DNA of 64,000 bases from Takakia lepidozioides (GCA_030704615.1 CM060733.1:17732001-17796000); one strand, 5' to 3'; counted from the stretch's first letter, positions 1,352 through 56,480 are shown. A program made the numbers and translations. The notes: generated by a model from the letters alone, not told the origin.

Positions 1352-2600
1352 TTGGCAATCCCTTCCACTGGGACAGGTTTCTTCCAGGCCCACAGGGCTT
1401 TGGCGCGAAGTCGCAGCCCCCCGGCTATGCGGGCAGCCCCGATCCGGGTTCCCTTGGTTGCTCCTCCCTCTCCCCGGCTGAGTCAGTCGCCAATTTCGGA
1501 TCCCACCACGCATGGGTGCCCACCCCAGCATACCGGGGTTCCCTCTCCACCTCCCCATACAGTCGACCCCCAGCAGGATGCAGTCGACCCTCAGCAGGAT
1601 CTATTGGAGGATATTTCGGATCTCCAGAGATCGATGAGTAAATCTTACCCTCTTGTGGAGCTAAATATGTCCACAATCCACGACAGTGTCGCAAACTTTT
1701 CGGAGAAAGGGGTGCTTATTCACTTCCCTGGTAGAAAAGTTGACAGAGATCATGCAAGGGATTGGGCCATCTGTCACTTGGGGGGGTCTGGCGACCTTAA
1801 TCATCATTTCTGCCACTCCAGGGGCCAAGGATTTTTCTCGGTTCTTTTGGATTCAAAAGAAGCTGCAGATAGGGCACTTTAATCCCCACCTGGCTGGTTT
1901 TAATGTTAACATTTTTCCTTGGTCGAGTGCTATGGGCAACAAAAATGGAAAGGTGTGGAGTCCCAGGATCATTGCCTCGCCATATATCCCGGACCAGTAT
2001 CTCTTCAGTTTGCTTGAGATAGGGAACTTCTTGGGGGAGTATTTGGGATGTTTGGCGGTGTTCAACCCCCACAACTGTCCAGTAGCCCTTAAGAATAATC
2101 TTGCTTGGAGGGGGGCCTCGAGTTCATCTAAGGCACATGAGAATGGGTTTCCAAAGATTGTTATAATGATGCCTGATGATGCAATCATCCCTGAATTTAT
2201 TCGTCTCCCCATTGACAAAGGCAACTTCTTCTCGGTCAAATTATATGAGGACACTACCTCTACAGTCTGCTACTACTGTGGACGTATGGGGCACCTCAAA
2301 GCTGTTTGCCCGAAGGCCCAAAAGAAAAGAATTGGGTCCCCATTGGGGGCAGAACAGCAACCTGCCGCCCCCCCTAAAAGGCACTTCTACGATCCGAAGG
2401 GGAAGTCCCTTGTCTTCTCCCAGGACACGCACAATGCAAAGAGGGCGGCATCGAATGCAGGCGAAGGAGACCTGCCAGATTGGGTTCCTCAGGCCACTAG
2501 TCATGCTCAACCACCGAATCTCAACAGGTGGTCAGCCTCGCTGTTGCGCGGCTTCTACTCACCCATCCCTTCGCTATCCGAGGCGGAAACTCCAAGATAG
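1352..2600 (+). mobile_element. L1-type LINE ORF1 (zinc knuckle), frameshifted
   Basis: Overlapping ORFs 1352-1882 and 1686-2600; Pro-rich N-terminus, DUF4283-like region (GQGFFSVLLDSKEAADRAL) and CCHC knuckle CYYCGRMGHLKAVC. Confidence 0.8.
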
Positions 2601-2850: not shown

Positions 2851-3309
2851 GAGTCTCTAATCTGCTCTACAGTATAATTCTACTGCTTGCTATCATTAAG
2901 CATCAACAGATCCTCCTCCTACTCCGTGCTCTCCATCTTTCTGCTCAGAGATACACTCTCTCCTCCTTTCCCCCAGTGATGTCCGAAGTCTCCCCCAAGA
3001 AGTGCCCCCCTCTCGTCTCCGCTGCCCGCTTTATCCCTTCCCCCTGTTCTAACCGTTGTCCTTCACAAACCGGTCCTCCGTGAATTACATGTTCCCCGGC
3101 AGATGTTGTTCCCCACAGTCGTTCCCTGTCATGATAACCGTTCCCTACGACTGTGTCAGACTGTGACGGCTGTTTCGGGCTGTGACGGGCTGTGTATGGC
3201 TGTGACGGGCTGTCTTAAAAAATTCAAACAAATTTCGCCTGGTCCCTGCGTATTTCATAATCATTTCGATCTTTCTACGAACATACCCACAAAGTTCTCA
3301 AAGCACAAA

Positions 3310-3490
3310 ATAATTTCGATTGATCTCATATTATAATAGGACGTATCAGAGGGTACATTGAACACACTGGCCAAGTTTCAAAGCGAACGAAAATCATTTG
3401 GATGTGCAACCATCCGTTGGCCCATTGAACGAATTTCGATTGAACTCATATTACTCTGGGGCCTCTTACATGGCACATTGAATATATTTC
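3310..3490. repeat. ~120-bp tandem repeat, first block (~1.5 units)
   Basis: Unit ...ttgaacacactggccaagtttcaaagcgaacgaaaatcatttggat...catccgttg.cccattgaacgaatttcgattga.ctcatatta..., same as at 4080-4495. Confidence 0.85.
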
Positions 3491-4079
3491 GCGTGCTCAT
3501 GATTTTTTTTTTCATTGCGTTTTTGAATGGGGCGTGTAATGTACCTATATGCAACGTGCATGTCAAATTTGGGAGCGATCAAAATTCATTTGGACCCAAA
3601 ACGACAGTTTCTTCCCTATTTTGCACTTCAAACTTGATTTGTGTTCTACTTCATGCACTTTTTTTAGAGAGTTCTGCAATAGTGAGCGAAGAGAACACTT
3701 TTTTTTGGGGGCATTTTTGATTGGTCCAAATTTCGGCAGGGGAGTAGCCGTGGGATGCTGGAAGCCGCAGAACAAAATTGAGCCAAAAACAAAATAAATA
3801 CGTGCCAGAAACCCCCACTGAAAGGCAGTGCAAACCTATTTATTGGCTTAAAATAAATTTAAATTCAATTAAATTGTGGAATGGCTTGAGGGGGGAGTGC
3901 GTCGATGGGGAGGCAAATGATTTATTCGTCTATTGTATCTTCACACATGTTCAAGCACATGCGGGCAAAAGAGGGGCTTCAACCACATCCGTTCAATGGG
4001 TGCAATAGCCGTGCACGCATTGCAGGATTTCTTTTTCGCATTGAACAAAAACCAGATGACAAATGAACGTCTCATTGGA

Positions 4080-4495
4080 CAATCGAATGATTTTCGATTG
4101 ATCTCGTATTACACTGGGACGTATCAGATGGTACATTGAACACACTGGCCAAGTTCAAAGCGAACGAAAATCATTTGGATGGGCAACCATCCGTTGACCC
4201 ATTGAACAAATTTCGATTGATCTCATATTACTCTGGGGCCTTTTACATGGCACATTGAACATAGTGGCCAAGTCTCAAAACGAACCAAAATCATTTCGAT
4301 GGCCAACCATCCGTTGAGCCATCGAATGAATTTCGATTGATCTTATATTAGTCCAGGACCTGATACATGGTATGTTGAACATCGTGGGAAAGTTTGAAAG
4401 CAAATGAAAATCATTTGGATGGGCAACCATTCAATCGCCCATTGAATGAATGGGGTTTCGTCTTCGATTATACTGGGACCTGTTACATGGTATGC
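4080..4495. repeat. ~120-bp tandem repeat, second block (~3.5 units)
   Basis: ttcgattgatct.atatta recurs at ~4093, ~4212 and ~4332, with a degenerate copy at ~4463. Confidence 0.9.
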
Positions 4496-4498
4496 CAT

Positions 4499-4783
4499 TT
4501 GAAGCTCTTTTTGTAGTGTCTCCTGCCTCGTAATGCGGTGCTTTTGATGTTCACTTTATCCAGTATGTTAATATTCTCCACCTGGAACAGATCCACATAT
4601 GTGTGCATAAATCCTTAAAAAACCAAATGACCATCTCAACTTTTATAAGCCTCATGGTCATTTGTTTTTGTAAGTTATATACGCATGTGTGGATATGTTC
4701 CAGATGGAAGATATTAACATTGGAAAAATAAGAGTTGGAGAAGCACCTCATTACGAAGCAAGAGACATTACAGAAGACCTCAA
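4499..4783. ncRNA. Long imperfect fold-back HP1 (candidate hairpin/miRNA-type precursor)
   Basis: Arm 4499-4634 pairs with 4654-4783, e.g. tgtctcctgcctcgtaatgcggtgctt vs revcomp tgtctcttgcttcgtaatgaggtgctt; ~19-nt loop. The inverted repeat is seen directly; RNA function is inferred. Confidence 0.55.
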
Positions 4784-4904
4784 TATTGAACATCTGGATG
4801 AAGAATTTTGCCCATCGTCGCTTCAAAGTTCTAGCGCTTCTGAAATGATCACATGTTTTTGGTGGAAGCAGATATCGTTGGCCACATTGATCTCGTACCC
4901 ATCG

Positions 4905-5020
4905 AAGACTCCCGTAGGCCACATGGAACGGTTCATGTGATATATTTTCACAAATGCGATGTGATACATTTATGAAATGATATCACATCAACCGTTTAAT
5001 GTGACCAATGCACGTCTTCT
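4905..5020. ncRNA. Imperfect fold-back HP2
   Basis: gaagac...ggccacatggaacggttcatgtgatatattttcacaaatg aligns without gaps to revcomp gaagac...ggtcacattaaacggttgatgtgatatcatttcataaatg (~53-nt arms). Confidence 0.5.
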
Positions 5021-5076
5021 GCACCATGGCGGAAATGTTCGCCACTTGAAAGCATAAACACAAATAATCCGTGCAA

Positions 5077-5452
5077 ACAAATGTCAAGAATCATATGTAC
5101 TGCAAGGTGTTTCATATTGCCGATGTTCATGTAGCAGAATTATTTAGGAATCGTTTTGCTACTCCCATGCCAACAACATCAGGTCCACTGCGACTGCCAT
5201 ATTCCGAATTCCGTATTAGCCACCACGGACATGAAACCAGGAACTTCGCACAAAATCTCCAATTTATTCAATTTATAGTGGGCCATGGCTGTAGCCTGCA
5301 AGCTGGCCGGGGTGGCTGATACGTCCGTTTGAACATGACAGTCTCAGAGGACGTTGGCATGGGAATAGCAAAAAGAGTACTACAGAATTCAGCTAGAGGA
5401 ACAACAATAGCATGAAACACCTTACCGTAAATATGATTGTTGACATAGGTTG
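5077..5452. ncRNA. Long imperfect fold-back HP3
   Basis: Arm ~5077-5232 pairs with ~5303-5452, almost ungapped. It explains the look-alike ORFs 5071-5319(+) and 5268-5468(-). Confidence 0.55.
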
Positions 5453-5520
5453 TAACAGCTCCAATCAATAGAGAACTCGCACCATCAGTTGCGCTCCAAT
5501 AGCAGTACCGGTCCCCCGAG

Positions 5521-6053
5521 TAAATAAAATTCCGTTGTAGATAATAAATTGCATACGCTCGAACCTCACAAATGTCATTTCAACAAAACCGGCCGTGTAT
5601 TGTGGCACTGTTTGTAACTGCGAATGTTTCAATGTTTCTGACAGGGTACTGAGAAAATGATATATTGGATCCATATGAGTTAGACAACAAACGTTCTATA
5701 TCTCATTCAACTGTGCGATACTACCATGAGTGGCATGGATAAAAAAGTGATAGGTGTACATGCGACCTCCGCACGTTTAAGTAGAGACCTAGTATCAAAC
5801 ATTCGGAGGTCGCATGTGCACCTATTACTTTCCGATCCATGCCTCTCATGGTAGTGTCGCACAGTTGAATGAGATGAGACGTTTGTTGTCTAACTCCTAC
5901 GGAACTAATACATCGTTTTCTCATAATCCTATCCGAAACCTTGGAACATTACAAATATAAACAGTGAGCCAGTACACAAACCATTTATGTTGTGATGACA
6001 GGTGCCAGGGTCGAGCATATGCAATGTAGTATTTACAATGAGATTTTATTTAT
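5521..6053. ncRNA. Very long fold-back HP4 (~255-nt arms)
   Basis: Arm 5521-~5775 pairs with ~5800-6053. The inner ~95 bp (gagttagacaacaaacgt...catgcgacctccg) is near-perfect; the outer part is mismatched but nearly ungapped. Confidence 0.6.
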
Positions 6054-6135
6054 TACATGCACGATCAAAATTGAGTTACGTCTTCTTTAAAGAACCATTG
6101 TACTGCCAGAAATGTCATATCTACGAGACTATGGT

Positions 6136-7613
6136 CTACTCCGTCCTATATACGTTTTTTGGCTCAGACCAATTGAATGGCTTGCCCATGAACCGAAGTA
6201 CTACATGGGCTAATGTGACTATCTCATTCTTGTTGTTGTCGTACAACCTTTGTAGCATTGAATGCCAACAACCTCCCGTAAATTGGTCCTGGAACATACT
6301 TTGATCATAATGAACGCCGTCATTTATTCGTACCGCTATCTTCCCAACGGCGAAGGCCTCCGACGTCATGTCCTGGGGGGGGGGGGGGGGGGGGGGGGGG
6401 GCGTGACATTCGCATTGAAAACCGATGCAATATCTTTTTTCACCCACCATCTTTTCGCGAATTCCCGGTCCAGCTTGTCTTGGTTTTCAAACTGGTACGG
6501 CGAGGCTTTGCGTATGCCCAATGAGATGGCTAAGCCCCAATCACACACCCCAATCTTGATCTCCTCGGTATCATATGGAAAATGCAACAAGATGTTGTCG
6601 GGGGACAAGTCGTTGTGCATGACACCGTTTTTGTGGACAACATCCATGATGCACACAAGTGGCCATGCAAGTTTACTGCGCATTTTCCGGAAACGAAGCA
6701 AGCGATCGCATTCCTGGAACTCTGTTTCTGTTCCCCTTTGTTCCAAAATCACCCTGTTGTCCGAATTGTTGCCTCATTTTCTGTCAAGGTTCATCATGTC
6801 GCGTATTGTCCCCCCATTCCACCTGCGAGTGTAACCCTCTACCTCACGTGCATTCACAGCAAAATACGAGATAACACCCGGATGCTGGAACTTCACTGCC
6901 AAACACTTGTCGTTATGTTGTCTTAACGTCTTTTCTGGATTTTTGGACTTGGGTTTTTTTCCCGCTAGCTCCTAACGCTCCGGTATTCTAGAATCACCAA
7001 CAATCCTACAGTGACGGACCTTAGCATACCCTTATTCTTTGTAATGGCCAATCTCTACCACCTTCGCAGTAGAGTTCAGGTAATAAAGACCAGTTGTGCC
7101 TCCCCCGCCCGATGACCCTGCCTTCCAAGGGACAACCCTAGTCCGGCGATGTGAATTCTGACTTGCCGAACAAGCCCAATACTCAACACGCCGCATTACC
7201 TCAGCTTCGGCGGAGGGCACTCGACCCTCGGTTGTTCTACCCTTCCATGTCTTCATTAGCTACCTCAAATTCCACGTGACGTCTTTTGCCATGCTTTGGA
7301 TCCTCCGATTGAACTTCGGCTTGTCCCTGTCCGCCGTCCATTTAGCCCCCGCCAAAGCGTTTGTCATTTTCCTCTCCATATTTTGCTGAAAAATCTGAAA
7401 CCCCTCCCATCCATGCCTAATATAAGCACTCTCCAACCTCATCATGTCCCTACCCTTGAAATAATCTGCTACCACTTCTTTCACCTTATCCAAGGCATCC
7501 GATCACGTGTAGTTTGGCTTGTTGACCTGGCTATCCCGCTCGTGGGCACGTTTTCTCTTCCTCCACCCCCCAGACGATCCCGCCCCAGAACTGGAATTCA
7601 CAACCCTCGACAT
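6136..7613 (-). pseudogene. Divergent intronless protein kinase (~490 codons) with 5 in-frame stops and a homopolymer frameshift
   Basis: One frame from ATG 7613 through ORFs 7260-7493, 7032-7256 and 6366-6752. Motifs: GYAKV, ELAGKK, HPGVI, WNGGT, HNDLSPDNILL, VCDWGLA; SEAFAVG lies after the G27 run in ORF 6136-6450. Stops at 7503, 7260, 7032, 6972 and 6774. Confidence 0.85.
6375..6401. repeat. G27 homopolymer (poly-Pro on the kinase strand)
   Basis: 27 consecutive G at the frame switch of the kinase. Confidence 0.95.
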
Positions 7614-8237
7614 TATATAAACCTTTGCACACTACAGGGTCCAAAACCTCAGAAAAATGGCAATGAACGCATGTGGATGGTATCTTCGTAGTTTTCTGCA
7701 AAAAAACAAGCCGCCGGAGATCCGGAAACAGCAAAATGGTGATACGATGATTGTACCGTGAACAAGTGTGTGGGACTGCCCAATAGAAACTGACAAAACC
7801 TCCCCCCCCAAATAATCACATTTGCACCTCCTGTTGGCAGTGCCAAGCAACGAAGTCCGAAAGGACTACATGATGCCAAGGAACCGCACCACAAGAGGGG
7901 CAAAAGTGATCAGAAAAGGAGGGGGGAATGGTTTATATAGGCGCCCACCAGCCCCCCCCCCTCCCAAAAAAATGGCATTATGCTTGAAAGGCGCGACAGG
8001 CCAGTGACGCCTCACCACGTGTCAGCGCGGCGCGACTGGCCAGTCGCACCTCGCCACGCGCACCCACATGGGAGAGGTCAAGGGTTCAAAACCACCTCCC
8101 CCCATCCCACTTGTTTTGTTTTTCCTGACCTGTGGCACCTCGCCACGTGGCTGGCCGAGGCGCCGCTTCAGGATTAAAAATAAAAAAACAAAACGCCGCA
8201 CGGCGGGTCCTTGGATTTCTAAGGAAAACAAAAACTT

Positions 8238-8610
8238 GCGACCGCTGCATGGCGGTCGCTATATTTATAAAAACAAGAAGAGCGACTGCCACATGGCCAA
8301 TGTAGGCGGTCGCTTATTTTAAAATGTAATAAAATACAAACGACTGCCAATATGGGCGGTCGCTTCATTTAAAAATAAATAAATTACGGGCGACCGCCAA
8401 TTTGGGTGGTCGCTTCATTTAAAAATAAATTAATTACGGGCGACCGCCAATTTCGGCGGTCGCTTCATTTAAAAATAAATAAATTACGGGCGACCGCCAA
8501 TACTGGCGGTTGCTTAATTTAACAAAATATTAAATTACAAGCGACCGCTAATATGGGCTGTCACTTTTATTAAAAATAATAAATTATATGCGACCGCCAA
8601 TATAGGGGGA
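8238..8610. repeat. Array of ~8 palindromic units GCGACCGCC-N4-7-GGCGGTCGC with AT-rich spacers, ~50-bp period
   Basis: Units start at ~8238, 8282, 8341, 8390, 8440, 8490, 8541 and 8590; the last copies are degenerate. Confidence 0.9.
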
Positions 8611-8828
8611 CTCATTTTTTAAGAAGAATTAATAAATATTAATAATTGGCCACGTCTGTTTTACACCATGGCTGCCATGTCATTACAAAGGGTAGAAGTA
8701 AATCGTAAAAGTCAAATGTAAAAAAAATAAAAACATGGGTAAACGTCCGGATTCGACGTTTTGTGACGCACGTCGGCCGTCAGACGGCCGACGTGTCAGC
8801 GCCACGTCACGTCAAGAATGATAACTAG

Positions 8829-11800
8829 GCTTTCGGGAACAACAACAGGAAAAGATGCGTATGCAAACATGGGTCAATTGGTCTGCCAAAGGCGAGAAAA
8901 TGTCTAAGTATTTCTTTCAGAAAACCAAGCTTAGAAGGGCCATGCAAACCATTCCTGAATTATATGTTGACAGTAAAGGCAACAAATCTTCCAAACCAAA
9001 GGAGCTCTGTGGGCTGGCTTTCAAGCACTTCAGCTCCCTGTTCCAAGCAGATCCGGTGGGGGTGGACATCGCCCAGTTGCTTCAAGCATACCTGCATTCT
9101 ACCCCATGTCAATACAGGGAAGGGGATGACCAACCCTTGTCCAAAGATTTCACCCCTATGGAGCTGGAGGATGCTCTGGACCAAATGAGCAAGTGTAAAA
9201 CTCCCGGTCTTGACGGTATGCCAATGGAGTTTTACAAGGCCCTCTGGCCTCGCATCGCTCAAGAATTCCGTGACATGGCAAATGAAATCCACAGGAAAGA
9301 TGCTATGCCAGGTTCCATGTCTCAAGGGGTCATTATTCTCCTTTTAAAAAAAGGGGATAGAGCAAACATTAATAATTATAGGCCCATATCGTTGCTTAAC
9401 GTGGCCTATAAAATTATTGCCAAGGCCCTGGCTCTCAGGCTCCAGCCCCTACTCCCTTCGTTGATTAGAACAGGTCAAGCCAGGTTTGTTAAAGGGAGGT
9501 ATATCTTGGATAATGTCCTTCTGGCCCAGGAGGCGGATACATATGCCAAGGCATCAAATCAAGCGCCAACACTCTGGCTGCTTGACTTTGAGAAGGCATT
9601 CGACAAAGTGGGTTGGGATTTTCTTCTGGCAGTTCTGCAAAAATGTGGGCTGCCACCCTCGTTCTGCAAGTGGGTTAACATCCTTATCCGCAACAGCTCC
9701 AACAGGGTTACTATTAATGGTCATTTGTCAAAACCCTTTGCCCTCCAGAGATCGGTGCGACAGGGATGCCCTCTCTCGCCTTTCCTCTTTCTGTTTGTGG
9801 CAGACTCTTTGGATTACATGTTGGAGGTTAACCCTGTCGTGAGGGGCCTTCAAATGCATGGCTTCGGAGCTGATGTTGCCCTTCAGATCAAAGATTCTAT
9901 GTTTGTTGATGACACCTTTCTCCTGCTTCAAGCTGAGCCAGCAGCTCTGTAAGCAGCCCAATGCACGATTGACACCTTCTGCAAGGTTTTGGGTTTCAGG
10001 GTGAATTGGTCGAACACCAAGGCTCTTCTGGTGGGTGATATTTCTAAGTCTGGTCTGGGGGTCTCCCCCGTATGGGGGGCTAACTTGGGTTTGACCTGGC
10101 TCAAGGACGGGGAGTCCACCACCCTCTTGGGCCACGTCTTCGGGATTAATCTCTCTGAAGACCAACGTTTGGGGCCCACTATAGCCAGGCTGAAGGGGCA
10201 ACTAACATTCTGGGGCTCTAGGTTCCTCTCCATTACTGGGAGGGCTCTGGTGGCTAACCAGACCCTTTTGGCCGGTATTTGGTATTTCGCCTCAACCTGG
10301 AGCCCCAGCTCTAAGCATATCCACGAAATCAAAAAGTGTATTAGGAACTTTATATGGGGGGCCCATTCGTTGGACTCTAACAAACGCCCCTAGGTTTCTT
10401 GGATTCAAATCATAATGCCCAAGAAAATGGGTGGCCTCAGTGTCTTGGATCCTGAAACCCAGATCAAAGCCCTATTGGGAAAATGGCTCCCCAGATTCCT
10501 GAGTCCAGAAAGAGGTTGGTAGAAACTTATGGTGATAGGTTCTATTTCCCTCAGTTCACCCCTGAGTTCCACTCAATGGTCTCCATCTCTAAGATGGATC
10601 ACTCAAGGTTATCGTCATAAATCCCCTGGCTCTTCCCTTTGGACCTCTATTTGGTTGGCCTGGGGGAAGTGCCGACCTTTCCTGCGAAAAAAAGAGCCTG
10701 CTTCCTTTTGTGAGGTGCTCAGGTAACACCTTTTCCTTACCAAGCCAGTCCCATCAACTGTGGAGAGGAGCCAAGCCACAAGATGGGCAGGGTGGGATGT
10801 AAGGGGACTCTCACAGGTCTCCCATCTATGGTTTAGTACCCCTGTATCTCTTTCTAGAACTCTTGGCACCCAAAGACTCTCCGCCGGCATTGCCTCATTT
10901 CTGCAATCAGTTCCAGACTCCTGGAGAGACATGCTCAGACAGGGTCCTTCTTCTCCATCTCTTTATCAGTGGGTGACCACACCTGATCATCATTTTCTGG
11001 TCATGTTCATAACGGAAGCCTCGCGTGTTAACCTGGTGGGTTTCACATTCAGAGCCCATCCGTATACGGGTGCTCTCTCGCTACACTCATCCGACTCCAT
11101 CTCAATCCCATACAACAACACCTCACCAGCCAGAATCTGCCACTGGAATTCCAAGCTCAAAGATTTTAATCCCAACACATAGGTTCTACCATGGTTATGA
11201 TCAGGAAGTTTCATTTGGTTTGGAGGCCAGGCCATCCATGATCTGCAAATCGACCCGACAGAATGGCATTGGGAATTCGGGGACAAGATTTGCTCCTTCT
11301 TCAATTACACGGCCAAGGGTGCCTACAGAGCGATGCTGAAGGCCAAGCCTCTAACCAAAAAATGGGACGACAGATGGGGCTTATTCCAATTTAGAGAGGA
11401 AAACTGGAAGTGCATTTGGGCTCTGATTTGGGAAAAATCAAAACTGTTTTCTATGATGTTACTATTGCAGCTAAGTTGGCCTGGCAAAAACTATGTGCAG
11501 AAGACAGGAAACCAGAACGAAAAGATTCCCTCTTCGCCTCCTTCAGAGCATCTTGGGGAAGAGGAAGAATCATTTGTTGCATCATTGATACGGACTCCTG
11601 TACATGGGCAGACTCCATACCTGAACTCTGGAAATACCGATGGGGCACCGTCTCAAAAACTTCAAATATTTCAAATATACTATTTATATTAACGAATTTA
11701 TTTAACGAATAATAATGAATAATAGGCCTCCCCTGATCTGGACTCGAGAGATATTAACTGGAAGCACATAAAGAGGGGATCTAAATCTAAGTTGATCTTC

Positions 11801-12178
11801 CTCAGATAGACATCTTCAGAGTTTCGCTCCTTGGCTGTTTCTGGCCTGTGCTCTTACTGTTCGTCGTTCCGTTCGGTTCCATCTAAACTAGGGCACCTCT
11901 CTCATGGACTTTTTCACTCCTATGAACTAATCCCAGATTAGCTCTCTGCGCTATGGCAAATCTTGCAACCAATAATAGATGGGTCTACCAGGGCTGCATG
12001 CGTAATTAGGTCTATTTTCTACCCTATTCACTGATCGTTGGAATCTCCAACACGGTCCCGTGTGTTAAGCCTCATGGCAATTGTAAGGGTTTAATTTTTT
12101 CCCTTTATTAATAGATTTTCAGGGCCTCTCATCCCTTTATTAAATAAATAAACAATAAAAATAAAATAAAATAAAAAA
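8829..12178 (+). mobile_element. L1-type LINE ORF2 (reverse transcriptase), 3' UTR and A-rich tail; degenerate
   Basis: KTPGLDGMP, NYRPISLLN, LDFEKAFDKV, RQGCPLSP, MFVDDT, then GRALVAN...RNFIWG; several stops. Tail AATAAATAAACAATAAAAATAAAATAAAATAAAAAA at ~12143-12178. The endonuclease domain is absent. Confidence 0.92.
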
Positions 12179-52620: not shown

Positions 52621-55600
52621 GCAAAATGAGCATAATAGAGGCCTTGCAAGCTATATTGTGAGGTGAAAGGACCACTCCAGCAAAAGGAGTAGAATTGACG
52701 CCTTGGTCAACACTATGGCGACACTATGGCGATAATATGAAGGCAGAGGGTGGCGAAAGGGGAGGAGGGACTTGAAGGCAGGGAGCGGTGGTATATATTA
52801 AGGTGGATGGCTTTGCATCCTTCCGTATTTGTTTTAGTGGCATGTCAATGTGATGTTTGTTTTTATATACCAGGAATTGAACCGGTGTGCAGGAACAACA
52901 CTGACAAGATGTAAAGCTATTTTATATGTACTCCAATTGTTTGAAGAAGTTTATTCCTCACGAGTCATACATTGGGACATATTTTTTATGTCAGACTATA
53001 TGCATTACGACTATGATTTTTCTACTCAAAATTACATCTCCCACTGAAATGTTATACTCCATTAGCCCTCCAAGTTTGGGTGGGCCCAGTTAATTCTAGA
53101 GTGGTCCAGGAATTAGCGTGGTCCGGGAATTAAAAAAGGGGGCTAATCTGATAAGGCCACATGTATTAAGGAATGAAATGGAAGGTACAAAAACAAATCC
53201 TCCGAGGCATTAATCAGGAAGGTCAGAAAGACGAAGGCGAATGGCCCAGCCAATGCTGGGCCGCTGGAACATGCGAATAATGAGGGCAGGTGTAGGTCGC
53301 TGCGTAGAAATAGTGGAAAGTTCTAGAAAAAATGGCGGGGCGGTGGCCTCTGTAAAGTTCGAGAAGTACCTGCGATCTGGAAAGTTCTTCTGGAGCGACC
53401 AGGAGGCGAGCGAGCAACAGTACCAGCGTGCGGGGTGCAAGGTAGGGTGGTGGGAGCTGCTGGTGCGCAACGACATGCTGGAAGGAACGCTGGTGGGCCC
53501 AGCAAGCTCTGCATAACGAACAGGCTAGTGTCGCGAGCCATATCTGTTGGAAATGGTAGATGTAGTGTTTGAACTGTATTGATTCGATACATACTGTTGT
53601 TACTCTGATGCAAACTTTGGTTGCTCAGCAGGTTCCTATATCCCAGTTTATGGCAGAACTCGTCGCAATGAGCATGCATTTTAGATTTGTGTATAACTTT
53701 CAAATGTTTATACTTGTAAATAAAGTTCCAAACCATCAACTATTAAAACGAAACGACAATAAATAACCATTATGAGGTCGTATGCCTGTGAAGCCTGATT
53801 CCGGCTCTATGGGTTTGTTCTCTTTCCTCTACCAGACTTAACCTTATCTAGGGAATGTAGTCGATAGATGGGCCTGGCAGAGAAGACGGAATCTTACTAA
53901 GAGGACACCCTCGCGTAAAACCCAAAAAGCCACCACCCTCACTGCCACGGCAGTGAGGTTCAAATAGTATTAGGTCATAACCTAATCCTAGTGCCGCATG
54001 ACACTTACATATAGGTCCACCATATGCCCTTCCAGCACAGCCATAGAAAGAAGCCAAATCACCCAGTCCCATCCTAATCTGATCCTAAACTAGCTGTTAG
54101 AATAAGACAACCCCTAATAAAGCTATCAGCTGTTGCCAGCTCATCCTCATGCGCAAAGGTGTAAGTTCATCCAGACTTCATCTTGGCTTCGTCCATCCCT
54201 TAAATCATCCGGAGCGCATCCCTCCTCTATTCATCCATGTCGAAAAATAAGGTGAGAAGGAATCCCAGCTCCACATATGTGAAGCCTGCTGGGCCCACAA
54301 GAAATTGCGAGCTCCTACGAGTGATGAGCTCAGGAAGAATGAAGCCTAGCCAAAACAAACTATACACCTAGCACACAAGGGATGAAAAAACCTAAGGAAG
54401 AAAACCTCACCCTGCAAGCTGGGTGGAGGACAAAACATCCCATAGGAAAAACCCCAAGTGCTACAAATGGTGCAGAAAACTAGCACGAAATTCAAATACT
54501 ATTCTAAAGAAGAGGATGCCATGTTTTGCGAGCTATCCGAGCTATGGGGGTGAAGATCACCTGACGGTTCTCAACATTCAAACAGGTTAGATCAAAAGTA
54601 AGAGTGCATAGAACAAGTAGTGAAACATGAATGGAGCTAGCTAAGTGAGGAGTAGAGGCATGTTGTGGGAGCAAGACATACTGTTTGCCAGGAAGAATAG
54701 CAGAGATAAGGTAAGGGCCATCAATTCTTCGTTTGGCCTTGGAAACCTGCTTACCAGGCTGGAGCCTCACACAAACAGACTGACCTACCTTGAATGACTC
54801 AAAATACACAACTCGACGGTTGTAATTTTTTGTCTGAGCAGCTTGGGCAAACACAATGTTAGATTTGGCAGTTTCCCTCAAAATGCATCTTCTAGCATCC
54901 ATGGAAAGCAAAAAGACTTCCCAATTTTCAAGCTTAGTAGCCGAGAGCTGCAGCCAGGAGATATGCAAAGGGGTTCTACATTTCCTACCATACAAAAGTT
55001 CAAAAGGTGTATTTTTTGTCCCTTTGTAACTGTTCAATCAAGGCAGGCAAGTCAGATTGGTAAGGGCACCACCCGGTGTAATGCTTGATATGCAAATCAT
55101 GCAAGCCACTACTGGGGTCCTGATGTCATGACGCATGTCAGCATGGGCTTTACCTTGAGGCCCCGATCTGGCAGGGACTGCAGGGTCCCAGCCTACCTCA
55201 GCTTTGAAGGCTTGCAGTTCTCCCTGGATTTCATTACGAAAAGATGATAACTCATGCACAATGGAAGGGACCAGATCTTCTGCAATACCTTTCACCCCAG
55301 GGTCCCCATCAGTAGGCTCTACACAGTGACTCTCCCTAGCTAGATGAGTGTGTTTCGTGTAGGCAACTTTAGACAGGCCTGCCTTAGCAGCTTTGAGACG
55401 TAACCTTTCTTCAATCAATTCCACCATCTCATCTTCAGTGGTGTAAGTCTGTTTTTGCAGAAACACTTTCTCAGCAGGGGGCAAGCCTTTTACAAAACAA
55501 TGTTTCAAAATAGCAGGTCTCTCTGATGCAATCAAAACCGACTTACAAATTGCAGTTCGTAAATCAGTGTATTATTTCCACACACTGTCGCCATAATGAA

Positions 55601-56480
55601 ATTTTAAGTCTGGTGTGGTGTAAGCTATGGGCTTTTCTTCACGAAAGAGCTTGCGAGCCAACTCTCTGGCTTCGACCCACGTAAGATCATTTTTGTCCTT
55701 AATGTTGGACTCAAACAGTTGCCTGGCTTCTCCATTGAGACAGATCTGAAAGGACTTCATTTGGAATCGTGGGGGAACTCCATTCATTTCAGTGTTGATT
55801 TCAAAAAAATTCAAGAAGGACTCAAAATCCTCCCCTAAGTTGTACTCAGGGTATTGCTCCTTATGCATTCGCTCTCCATGATCAGATTTTCGTGAAGTAG
55901 TGTCCGGAACTTCAGATTGTTTCAGCAACATCTTCAAAAGGGGGGGTACAATTTGAAATCACCCCCATGGCTTTACACAGCTCGTCCAAATCAAATGTGG
56001 GCGGAGGCACAGTCGCCGGATCTTTGTGATCTCCGGACGACTCTCCCATTTCCATATTATTCTTTTCATTAGTTGTTGTCTCTTCCCTCTCCTCCGTTGC
56101 ACGTTTTTCCAACTCACTCAGTCCCATTGTCTCTTCTGCTTCCCTTTCTAGCATAGATCTTGTAAATACAGGCATGAGAAGAGAAGTACACGGCTATCTG
56201 TCTGAAGAAGTACTAAGCTGTGAGTCCCACACAGTGGGAGGTGATGAAGCGGTGCTTGTGCAGCAGGTACACTCATTCTCCCAAGAATGCCCACAGTTCC
56301 TCTTCACCCTTGAGCCAAAAAGCCACGCGCACGATGCTGCGCACTGCTTTCTCTTTCACCAACAGCGTGTGGGCAGGATATGTCTGAGCTTCTTCGGCCT
56401 TGTAGCGACCTATTGTTTCACGCCGAAAACACACCCCCGAAAAGATCAACACATCACTGGGACAAAAAAGAAATTCAGAG

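What the first reader, a model, noticed from the sequence alone, without database searches (positions are those of the whole stretch)
4499..6053. 1.55 kb built almost entirely of four back-to-back, mutually unrelated fold-backs
Seen: arms of about 135, 53, 155 and 255 nt separated by only ~55-120 nt. The arms are nearly ungapped yet carry many scattered mismatches including transversions, and the four hairpins share no obvious sequence. Inference: length-preserving divergence looks like selection on RNA duplex structure (a polycistronic miRNA/hpRNA cluster), not a decaying MITE. G:U bias did not indicate a strand.
Basis: partly seen in the sequence, partly recalled or inferred. Interest (0 to 1): 0.8.

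Follow-up and report, generated by a model that had tools for sequence, protein, structure and literature searches.

The report
Hairpin cluster inside a dead transposon
Four long DNA fold-backs really do sit side by side here, but they lie just after a broken protein-kinase gene in a decayed jumping-gene copy of a moss genome. Nothing in the sequence shows they are a selected microRNA cluster.

Summary
Four mutually unrelated imperfect inverted repeats fill 4499-6059: H1 4499-4783, H2 4902-5021, H3 5073-5457, H4 5516-6059. They fold far better than shuffles (z -11 to -20). The density is about 60 times that of the rest of the window and of 640 kb of related loci.

The miRNA-cluster reading is not backed by any test I could run:
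- Arm mismatches show no G:U strand bias and no excess of transitions (65 ts : 88 tv).
- The indel-to-substitution ratio is ordinary (16:153).
- No Rfam family reaches its threshold.
- Nothing in the window is complementary beyond chance.

The cluster starts about 80 nt after the stop of a decayed intronless kinase pseudogene (7562-6139, minus strand), between motif arrays. Homologous kinases elsewhere sit beside a hAT transposase (L012) or a RING gene (L008). So this looks like the non-coding core of a dead, transposase-less DNA-transposon copy.

None of 44 related moss-type loci has such a cluster or any similar sequence.

The scan has noted the same kinase-plus-hairpins layout at many other places in this genome (Takakia); I could not check those copies. 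Reads and paralogous copies were unobtainable, so expression and compensatory change remain untested.

The parts
4499..4783 (.). Hairpin H1: arms about 4499-4639 and 4645-4783
   Evidence: 134 aligned columns, 80% identical, 6 gap blocks. z = -15 for 4500-4799.
4902..5021 (.). Hairpin H2: arms 4904-4956 and 4967-5019, 10-nt loop
   Evidence: 53-59 nt arms, 74-77% complementary.
5073..5457 (.). Hairpin H3: best-paired arms 5076-5174 and 5353-5451; inner part poorly paired
   Evidence: 185 columns, 71% identical, ts:tv 14:39.
5516..6059 (.). Hairpin H4: arms 5521-5778 and 5797-6052; identity rises from 78% at the base to 89% near the 18-nt loop
   Evidence: z = -20 for 5700-5999.
4036..4514 (+). 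Tandem array of four 120-nt units abutting H1. A further 1.5 units at 3312-3486 are 93% identical to 4092-4263.
6139..7562 (-). Intronless protein-kinase pseudogene: three in-frame stops plus an unresolved 63-nt break at 6972-7034, and a frameshift near the poly-G run 6375-6401. Its end lies about 80 nt from H4.
   Evidence: frame segments; Pkinase catalytic loop, E = 2.5e-7; about 30% identity over 350-390 aa to 494-552-aa kinases.
7787..7823 (-). 39-nt motif upstream of the kinase, 90% identical to the stretch 57-95 nt upstream of the kinase start in relative L008
8272..8632 (.). Array of seven 50-nt units, each holding the short palindrome GCGACCGCC...GGCGGTCGC, upstream of the kinase
   Evidence: 20 motif matches against 2.9 expected.
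3100..3213 (.). Candidate left end: GTTCCC motifs and a 10/20-nt GGCTGTGACGG array (3149-3213)
   Evidence: Boundary not resolved.
8757..8848 (.). Candidate right end: palindrome CGGCCGTC-A-GACGGCCG (8774-8790). The terminal CTGTTGTTGTTCCCG (reverse complement) matches the left CAGATGTTGTTCCCC.
   Evidence: Boundary not resolved; no clean 8-bp duplication beside these termini.

Best explanation
The four fold-backs are old inverted duplications. They make up the non-coding stretch just 3' of the kinase gene of a multi-gene cut-and-paste DNA transposon, most likely hAT-type. The copy in this window is dead and lacks a transposase. What remains is: left motif array, 120-nt repeat array, hairpin cluster, kinase pseudogene, palindromic array, right end.

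Shown here: the hairpins, their clustering, the kinase pseudogene and its arrays, and the link between this kinase family and a hAT transposase or a RING gene in relatives.

Inferred: the hairpins belong to the element rather than to the host. They arose by inverted duplication during repair or aberrant transposition. If a copy is transcribed through them, by read-through from the kinase or from a convergent gene, each would fold into long imperfect double-stranded RNA. Dicer-like enzymes would cut this into heterogeneous siRNAs that match every copy of the family. That would make it a trigger or amplifier of silencing of the family, not a set of precise miRNAs aimed at host genes.
For: - Hairpins are real and clustered.
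- They start about 80 nt after the kinase pseudogene's stop. On the kinase strand, AATAAA signals at 6054-6045 sit at the outer edge of H4.
- The kinase is a decayed copy of an intronless family of about 500-550 aa.
- In L012 a homologous kinase is convergent with a hAT transposase carrying DUF659 and the hAT dimerisation domain. In L008-L010 it lies beside a 1039-aa RING protein.
- Motif arrays flank the unit, and L008 carries short-palindrome arrays of similar sequence in its own element.
- There is no signature of RNA-level selection: G:U 29 vs 36, ts:tv 65:88, indel:substitution 16:153, no codon periodicity.
- No hairpin has its own target-site duplication.
- Every hairpin has 21-nt stretches with at most 2 non-pairs, so dicing is physically possible.
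- Published precedent: hairpin-forming palindrome clusters in maize Sirevirus LTRs are siRNA hotspots (PMC4728375). miRNA-like structures in maize transposons correlate with small RNAs and methylation (PMC10760457). Transcribed inverted duplications of Ac silence Ac/Ds (10.1101/2020.01.07.897926).
- Unchecked scan notes report the same kinase-plus-hairpins layout at many other sites of this genome.
Against: - No transposase, no clean terminal inverted repeats and no clean 8-bp duplication define the element in this window.
- The hAT assignment rests on one relative (L012) and on unchecked notes.
- None of 44 related loci has a hairpin cluster after the kinase. Fold-backs there are no more frequent than background (7 of 44 loci, never more than one each). 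No relative shares any hairpin sequence. So the cluster is not a general feature of the lineage.
- No arm resembles the kinase, the RING gene or the transposase of relatives, so a self-targeting origin is not shown here.
- Four different adjacent duplications need four events. That clustering is not explained by neutral repair alone.
- Transcription is untested.
Confidence: 0.6

Rival explanations
1. A functional polycistronic hairpin-RNA or miRNA cassette. The transposon lineage (or the host) keeps the four stems under selection for RNA pairing, and they are processed into defined small RNAs that regulate the element's own genes or host genes.
For: Four unrelated hairpins packed into 1.55 kb is about 60 times the background density. 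All have miRNA-grade 21-nt duplex stretches. H1 and H2 are of pre-miRNA size. H4 is best paired near its loop. Unchecked scan notes say clusters of 3-6 hairpins recur in other copies, which would fit retention.
Against: No G:U excess on either strand. Transversions exceed transitions. The indel rate looks ordinary. H3 and H4 exceed 300 nt. There is no Rfam family hit. No complementary target exists in the window beyond chance. The cluster is absent from 44 related loci. This copy sits beside a pseudogene.
Confidence: 0.15
2. Four independent insertions of fold-back or MITE-type elements into an insertion hot spot of the transposon's non-coding core.
For: The hairpins are mutually unrelated and sharply bounded, with short spacers. 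Plant MITEs are typically fold-backs of about 100-600 nt (my own knowledge, not checked here).
Against: No flanking direct repeat of 5-10 nt adjoins any hairpin end whose terminal arms pair. No second copy of any arm exists in 64 kb of window or 640 kb of related loci. This test is weak, because 22-32% divergence would blur short duplications.
Confidence: 0.1
3. A DNA-level or transcription-level cis element of the transposon. The stems might act as a barrier or terminator between convergent genes, or as structure-forming DNA used in transposition or repair, without small RNAs.
For: The cluster sits just past the kinase poly(A) signals. In relatives the kinase is convergent with the next gene. 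hAT transposition is reported to proceed through DNA hairpin intermediates (abstract of PMC5499845, listed).
Against: Relatives with the same convergent layout do without hairpins. Nothing in the sequence links the stems to the terminal motifs, apart from a weak GCGACCTCC resemblance at the apex of H4.
Confidence: 0.1

Closest known systems
Palindrome-rich region of maize Sirevirus LTRs (PMC4728375) and miRNA-like structures in maize transposons (PMC10760457)
   Same: Several hairpin-forming palindromes clustered in a non-coding part of a transposon. In those cases they are proposed as templates for hairpin-derived small RNAs that help silence the family.
   Different: Those lie in the LTR cis-regulatory region of Copia retrotransposons, and small-RNA mapping supports them. 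Here the host is a DNA transposon's internal region next to a kinase gene, the arms are much longer (53-270 nt), and there are no RNA data.
Inverted duplications of Ac made by alternative transposition (10.1101/2020.01.07.897926); Mu killer (from my own knowledge)
   Same: Inverted duplication within or of a cut-and-paste transposon gives a transcribed hairpin whose siRNAs silence the family.
   Different: Those hairpins are young, near-perfect copies of the element's own coding or terminal sequence at a single locus. Here the arms are 22-32% diverged, match no gene of the element that I could test, and (per unchecked notes) travel within the element.
Plant MIRNA clusters and young inverted-duplication MIRNA genes
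   Same: Adjacent imperfect stem-loops. H1 and H2 are of precursor size, and all four have 21-nt duplex-grade stretches.
   Different: No known family match, no target, no evidence of precise processing. Two hairpins are too long, and the setting is a dead transposon copy.
hAT transposons carrying extra genes
   Same: The homologous kinase lies beside a hAT transposase (L012) or a RING gene (L008). Short-motif arrays are present near the ends.
   Different: This window's copy has no transposase and no proven ends. I found no paper describing a kinase-plus-RING hAT lineage (one search only).

Membership tests
Plant MIRNA gene (annotation criteria as I recall them from Axtell and Meyers 2018) | Fold-back of at most about 300 nt | tested here: not met
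   H1 (about 285 nt) and H2 (about 120 nt) pass. H3 (about 385 nt) and H4 (about 545 nt) do not.
Plant MIRNA gene | A precise miRNA/miRNA* duplex with 2-nt 3' overhangs, seen in small-RNA reads | not testable with these tools
In silico, duplex-grade 21-nt stretches exist in all four hairpins.
Plant MIRNA gene | Match to a described miRNA family | tested here: not met
   No Rfam hit at gathering score. The best sub-threshold hit scores 42.8 bits against a cut-off of 90.
Hairpin-RNA / inverted-repeat siRNA locus | Long inverted repeat able to form extended double-stranded RNA | tested here: met
   z = -11 to -20. 84-86% of stem positions pair, counting G:U, in H1 and H4; 74-81% in H2 and H3.
Hairpin-RNA / inverted-repeat siRNA locus | One transcript spans both arms and 21-24-nt siRNAs arise from the stem | not testable with these tools
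   No reads were obtainable. The genome is not in the protein/contig collections.
hAT-superfamily transposon (non-autonomous copy) | 8-bp target-site duplication next to short terminal inverted repeats | tested here: inconclusive
   Candidate termini at 3100 and 8848 match at 15 of 19 positions but lack a flanking duplication. An 8-bp direct repeat ATGATAAC (3131-3138, 8819-8826) has no inverted repeat beside it.
hAT-superfamily transposon | hAT transposase in the element or in close relatives of the element | tested here: inconclusive
   None in the window. Relative L012 has DUF659 (E = 5e-42) and the hAT dimerisation domain (E = 3e-9), convergent with the homologous kinase. No other fetched locus shows a transposase.
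MITE / fold-back element, one per hairpin | Its own target-site duplication at each hairpin | tested here: not met
   No 5-10-nt flanking direct repeat at any plausible boundary of H1, H3 or H4. The one hit for H2 lies inside its stem.
MITE / fold-back element | Many solo copies in the genome | not testable with these tools
   Only this 64-kb window of the genome is readable, and it holds no second copy.

The most novel reading that the evidence does not exclude
A lineage of multi-gene hAT transposons in an early-diverging moss carries, as a retained module of its own, a cassette of several unrelated long hairpin RNAs next to its kinase gene. This would be a transposon-encoded polycistronic small-RNA unit. 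It might tune the element's own activity or act on host silencing.
Probability: 0.15. Interest if true: 0.7.

Novelty: new variant of a known kind. Interest (0 to 1): 0.35.

Why it matters
Hairpin-forming stretches inside plant transposons are thought to be where the host's small-RNA machinery first gets a grip on an active element. Until now they have been described mainly in maize. A compact cassette of four long hairpins that travels with a kinase-carrying DNA transposon in a moss would extend the idea to bryophytes and to a gene-carrying cut-and-paste element. It would also give a clean system to ask whether such hairpins are kept by the element or merely tolerated. As it stands, this particular copy is dead and nothing shows that it is expressed, so its value is as one member of a family worth analysing genome-wide.

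Tried and rejected
- **Reads:** After, letters from 4499-6053 went only to local tools (Rfam scan, scripts).
- **Paralogous copies:**
  - The kinase piece found no close relative among 1.84 and 5.8 billion proteins; the best local identity was 50-56%.
  - Two exact-ORF look-ups from the window were not on record, so this genome is not in those collections.
  - The search of earlier findings by sequence was blank twice.
- **Coding origin of the arms:** no Pfam hit for ORFs in the hairpins. No codon periodicity of mismatches. No tblastn or tblastx match to the kinase, RING, transposase or other ORFs of relatives.
- **Targets:** the best complementary match elsewhere in the window is 15 nt (30.2 bits). 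Shuffled hairpins reach 32.2 bits.
- **Conservation of a hairpin cluster in relatives:** 0 of 44 loci have two or more fold-backs after the kinase. 7 of 44 have one, which equals the background density.
- **Element boundaries:** unresolved. The idea that the neighbouring LINE was split by the element was rejected, because no LINE-like coding sequence lies left of 3100.
- **Age argument:** the 93% identity of the duplicated 173-nt segment bounds decay only since that duplication, not since insertion. The stop-codon count in the kinase gives only a very rough decay of about 6%. I therefore cannot say how imperfect the stems were when this copy inserted.

Full report
**1. Observation**

The repeat search and a self-BLAST of 3301-6500 against the window both return four fold-backs and nothing else of the kind nearby:
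- 4509-4775: 73.7% arm identity over 274 nt.
- 4904-5019: 73.5% over 117 nt.
- 5081-5446: 67.9% over 377 nt.
- 5521-6052: 77.6% over 536 nt. Its innermost 79-nt arms (5700-5778 / 5797-5875) are 89% complementary.

Global alignment of the arms gives 134, 59, 185 and 270 aligned columns at 80, 76, 71 and 78% identity.

As RNA, 4495-5040 folds at -207.5 kcal/mol against -126.8 +/- 7.1 for dinucleotide shuffles, z = -11.4. 300-nt windows centred on H1 and H4 reach z = -15 and -20, while the spacers are at z about 0.

The four hairpins share no sequence with each other or with the remaining 62 kb. With one uniform criterion (arms of at least 40 nt, loop of at most 700 nt):
- The window has five fold-backs. 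Four of them are in these 1.55 kb; the fifth is a palindromic motif array.
- 640 kb of related loci have 0.044 per kb.

The clustering is therefore real and far above chance.

**2. Surroundings**

On the minus strand, directly after the cluster, lies a decayed open reading frame. It runs 7502-7263, 7259-7035, 6971-6777 and 6773-6369 in one frame, then 6486-6139 in another. That makes three in-frame stops plus an unresolved 63-nt break (6972-7034), and a frameshift near a run of 27 G at 6375-6401.

The piece 6773-6369 carries a protein-kinase catalytic loop (Pkinase, E = 2.5e-7, just under Pfam's cut-off). An exhaustive HMMER search gives 262 relatives. The best full-length ones are 494-552 aa. 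tblastn of nine of these back onto the window aligns about 350-390 residues at 24-32% identity over 7562-6411, and in three cases the C-terminus over 6372-6139. So this is an intronless kinase pseudogene of about 1.4 kb, ending about 80 nt from the outer base of H4. On that strand two overlapping AATAAA signals (6054-6045) sit exactly at the edge of H4 (read).

Motif arrays surround the unit:
- To the left of the cluster is a tandem array of four 120-nt units (4036-4514). A further 1.5 units at 3312-3486 are 93% identical to 4092-4263.
- Further left is a 10/20-nt GGCTGTGACGG array (3149-3213).
- Upstream of the kinase is an array of seven 50-nt units, each with the palindrome GCGACCGCC...GGCGGTCGC (8272-8632; 20 motif matches against 2.9 expected).
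- Beyond that is the palindrome CGGCCGTC-A-GACGGCCG at 8774-8790.

A 5'-truncated LINE begins at about 8849: reverse transcriptase E = 3e-28, with an A-rich tail near 12140-12178.

**3. What the kinase travels with**

I fetched DNA around relatives of the kinase.
- In L012 the kinase (552 aa) is convergent with a 926-aa protein, 2.3 kb away. That protein carries DUF659 (E = 5e-42) and the hAT dimerisation domain (E = 3e-9).
- In L008, L009 and L010 the kinase (494 aa) is followed by a convergent 343-aa gene and a 1039-aa RING-H2 protein. L008 also has arrays of short palindromes of the type GGCCGTCGGATCCGACGGCC, like the window's right end.
- A 39-nt stretch upstream of the window's kinase (7787-7823) is 90% identical to the stretch 57-95 nt upstream of the L008 kinase start, although the proteins are only about 32% identical.

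A scan of metagenome contigs gave 76 more loci, many on long contigs. I suspect moss host DNA in host-associated samples, but the source of those samples was not checked. Partial RING-gene matches occur in three of them. No further transposase was seen within the 6-kb flanks.

So the kinase belongs to a family that, at least sometimes, rides in hAT-type elements with a RING gene. The window holds neither a RING gene nor a transposase. I read 3100-8848 as a dead, internally deleted copy.

Its ends are not proven:
- The best candidate termini (CAGATGTTGTTCCCC at 3100; the reverse complement of the end at 8848 reads CTGTTGTTGTTCCCG) have no flanking duplication.
- An 8-bp direct repeat ATGATAAC (3131-3138, 8819-8826) has no inverted repeat beside it.

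**4. Tests of 'selected RNA duplex'**

- *Strand-specific wobble.* Selection for pairing should favour mismatches that still pair as G:U on the transcribed strand. G:U-compatible mismatches number 29 on the + strand and 36 on the - strand: H1 8/7, H2 2/3, H3 4/10, H4 15/16. There is no bias.
- *Transitions against transversions.* Transitions can be tolerated in a stem; transversions cannot. The arms differ by 65 transitions and 88 transversions, and H3 by 14 and 39. That is the opposite of what selection for pairing predicts.
- *Length preservation.* There are 16 gap blocks against 153 substitutions. About one indel per ten substitutions seems to me (from memory, no reference set checked here) within the usual range for unconstrained DNA, so it needs no special explanation.
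- *Coding origin.* Mismatches show no codon periodicity (p = 0.28-0.78) and the ORFs have no Pfam match. The arms are not diverged coding fragments.
- *Known families.* No Rfam family reaches its gathering score. With relaxed thresholds only generic hairpin matches appear, the best at 42.8 bits against a cut-off of 90.
- *Targets.* The best complementary match elsewhere in the window is 15 nt, within the range of shuffled controls.
- *Dicer competence.* All four hairpins contain 21-nt gap-free stretches with at most two non-pairs. Dicing is therefore physically possible if the region is transcribed.

**5. Tests of 'four MITEs'**

No hairpin has a 5-10-nt direct repeat flanking ends whose terminal 10 nt pair; the only hit lies inside H2's stem. 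No second copy of any arm is present in the window or in 640 kb of related loci. The test is weak at this divergence, and genome-wide solo copies could not be counted.

**6. Is the cluster a conserved feature of the lineage?**

Among 44 related loci with at least 1.5 kb after the kinase:
- None has two or more fold-backs within 3 kb.
- Seven have one. Examples: L014 with arms of about 200 nt, 650 nt after the kinase; L050, L052 and L053 with arms of 83-107 nt, about 800 nt after it.
- That density, about 0.06 per kb, equals the background of 0.044 per kb.

Folding z-scores after the kinase in L008, L012 and L002 stay between +2 and -5. Neither blastn nor tblastx finds any similarity between the window's hairpins and these loci. 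The cassette is thus specific to this genome's branch of the family, or younger than the split from those relatives.

**7. What earlier notes of the scan add (unchecked leads)**

The notes identify the genome as the moss Takakia. They report 'kinase plus 3-6 hairpins', often with a RING gene and a hAT transposase, at many other sites. Follow-ups there concluded that these are dead hAT copies with unusual cargo, and that some hairpins resemble parts of the element.

I could confirm only these points:
- The kinase-hairpin adjacency here.
- The kinase-hAT and kinase-RING links in relatives.
- The motif arrays.

I could not see the other copies, and I found no resemblance between these hairpins and any gene of the relatives. 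If the notes are right, the cassette is multi-copy and transposon-borne. That rules out a single-copy host MIRNA cluster, but leaves open whether the element keeps the hairpins for a reason.

**8. Mechanism**

Most likely (about 0.6): inverted duplications accumulated in the non-coding core of the element during repair or aberrant transposition. They were carried along as it spread and decayed after this copy died. When an active copy is transcribed through them, the stems would give long imperfect double-stranded RNA and heterogeneous siRNAs matching all copies. This follows what has been proposed for Sirevirus LTR palindromes (PMC4728375) and for miRNA-like structures in maize transposons (PMC10760457). 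It has been shown experimentally for inverted Ac duplications (10.1101/2020.01.07.897926).

What this does not explain is why four different duplications lie side by side. That is the main reason to keep the rival of a retained RNA cassette (0.15). The remaining rivals are a MITE hot spot (0.1) and a DNA- or transcription-level cis role (0.1).

**9. Limits**

- This genome is absent from the protein and contig collections.

**10. Verdict**

There is, however, no sign of selection for RNA pairing, no miRNA family, no target and no expression data, and the locus lies in a dead transposon copy. I class it as a new variant of a known kind (transposon-borne hairpin clusters), of modest interest on its own. 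It would be more interesting as a family-wide question.

Noticed in passing
window 7787-7823 (minus strand) and L008:1006-1044: A 39-nt non-coding stretch upstream of the kinase is 90% identical between this window and a relative whose kinase protein is only about 32% identical. It may be a conserved promoter or leader element of the transposon lineage.
   Followed up: partly
window 6369-6773 (minus strand); alignment A1: The kinase family has an unusual catalytic core. It reads H-N-D-L-S-P-x-N where I recall the usual H-R-D-x-K-x-x-N, and C-D-W-G where I recall D-F-G. These residues are invariant across 11 full-length relatives.
   Followed up: no
window 6375-6401: A run of 27 G (a proline run in the kinase frame) lies next to the frameshift of the kinase pseudogene.
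   Followed up: no
window 5762-5770 and 5805-5813: The apex of H4 carries GCGACCTCC on both arms. This is one mismatch from the palindrome motif GCGACCGCC of the 50-nt array at 8272-8632. It could be chance, or a hint that H4 grew from such a motif.
   Followed up: no
window 3314-3486 and 4092-4263: A 173-nt piece of the 120-nt repeat array is duplicated about 780 nt away at 93% identity. That is much younger than the divergence within the array (about 79%) or between the hairpin arms.
   Followed up: partly
window 8849-12178 (+) and 1686-2600 (+): A 5'-truncated LINE (reverse transcriptase E = 3e-28) abuts the candidate right end of the element. A separate ORF with a CCHC zinc knuckle lies at 1686-2600.
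   Followed up: partly
L014:2440-2844; L032:2051-3950: Metagenome relatives carry single large fold-backs. In L014 arms of about 200 nt lie 650 nt after the kinase. In L032 an inverted repeat with arms of about 660 nt lies upstream of the kinase.
   Followed up: partly
window 54507-55958 (minus strand): Three consecutive stop-separated reading-frame segments look by eye like a decayed retrotransposon gag/integrase region. Not searched.
   Followed up: no
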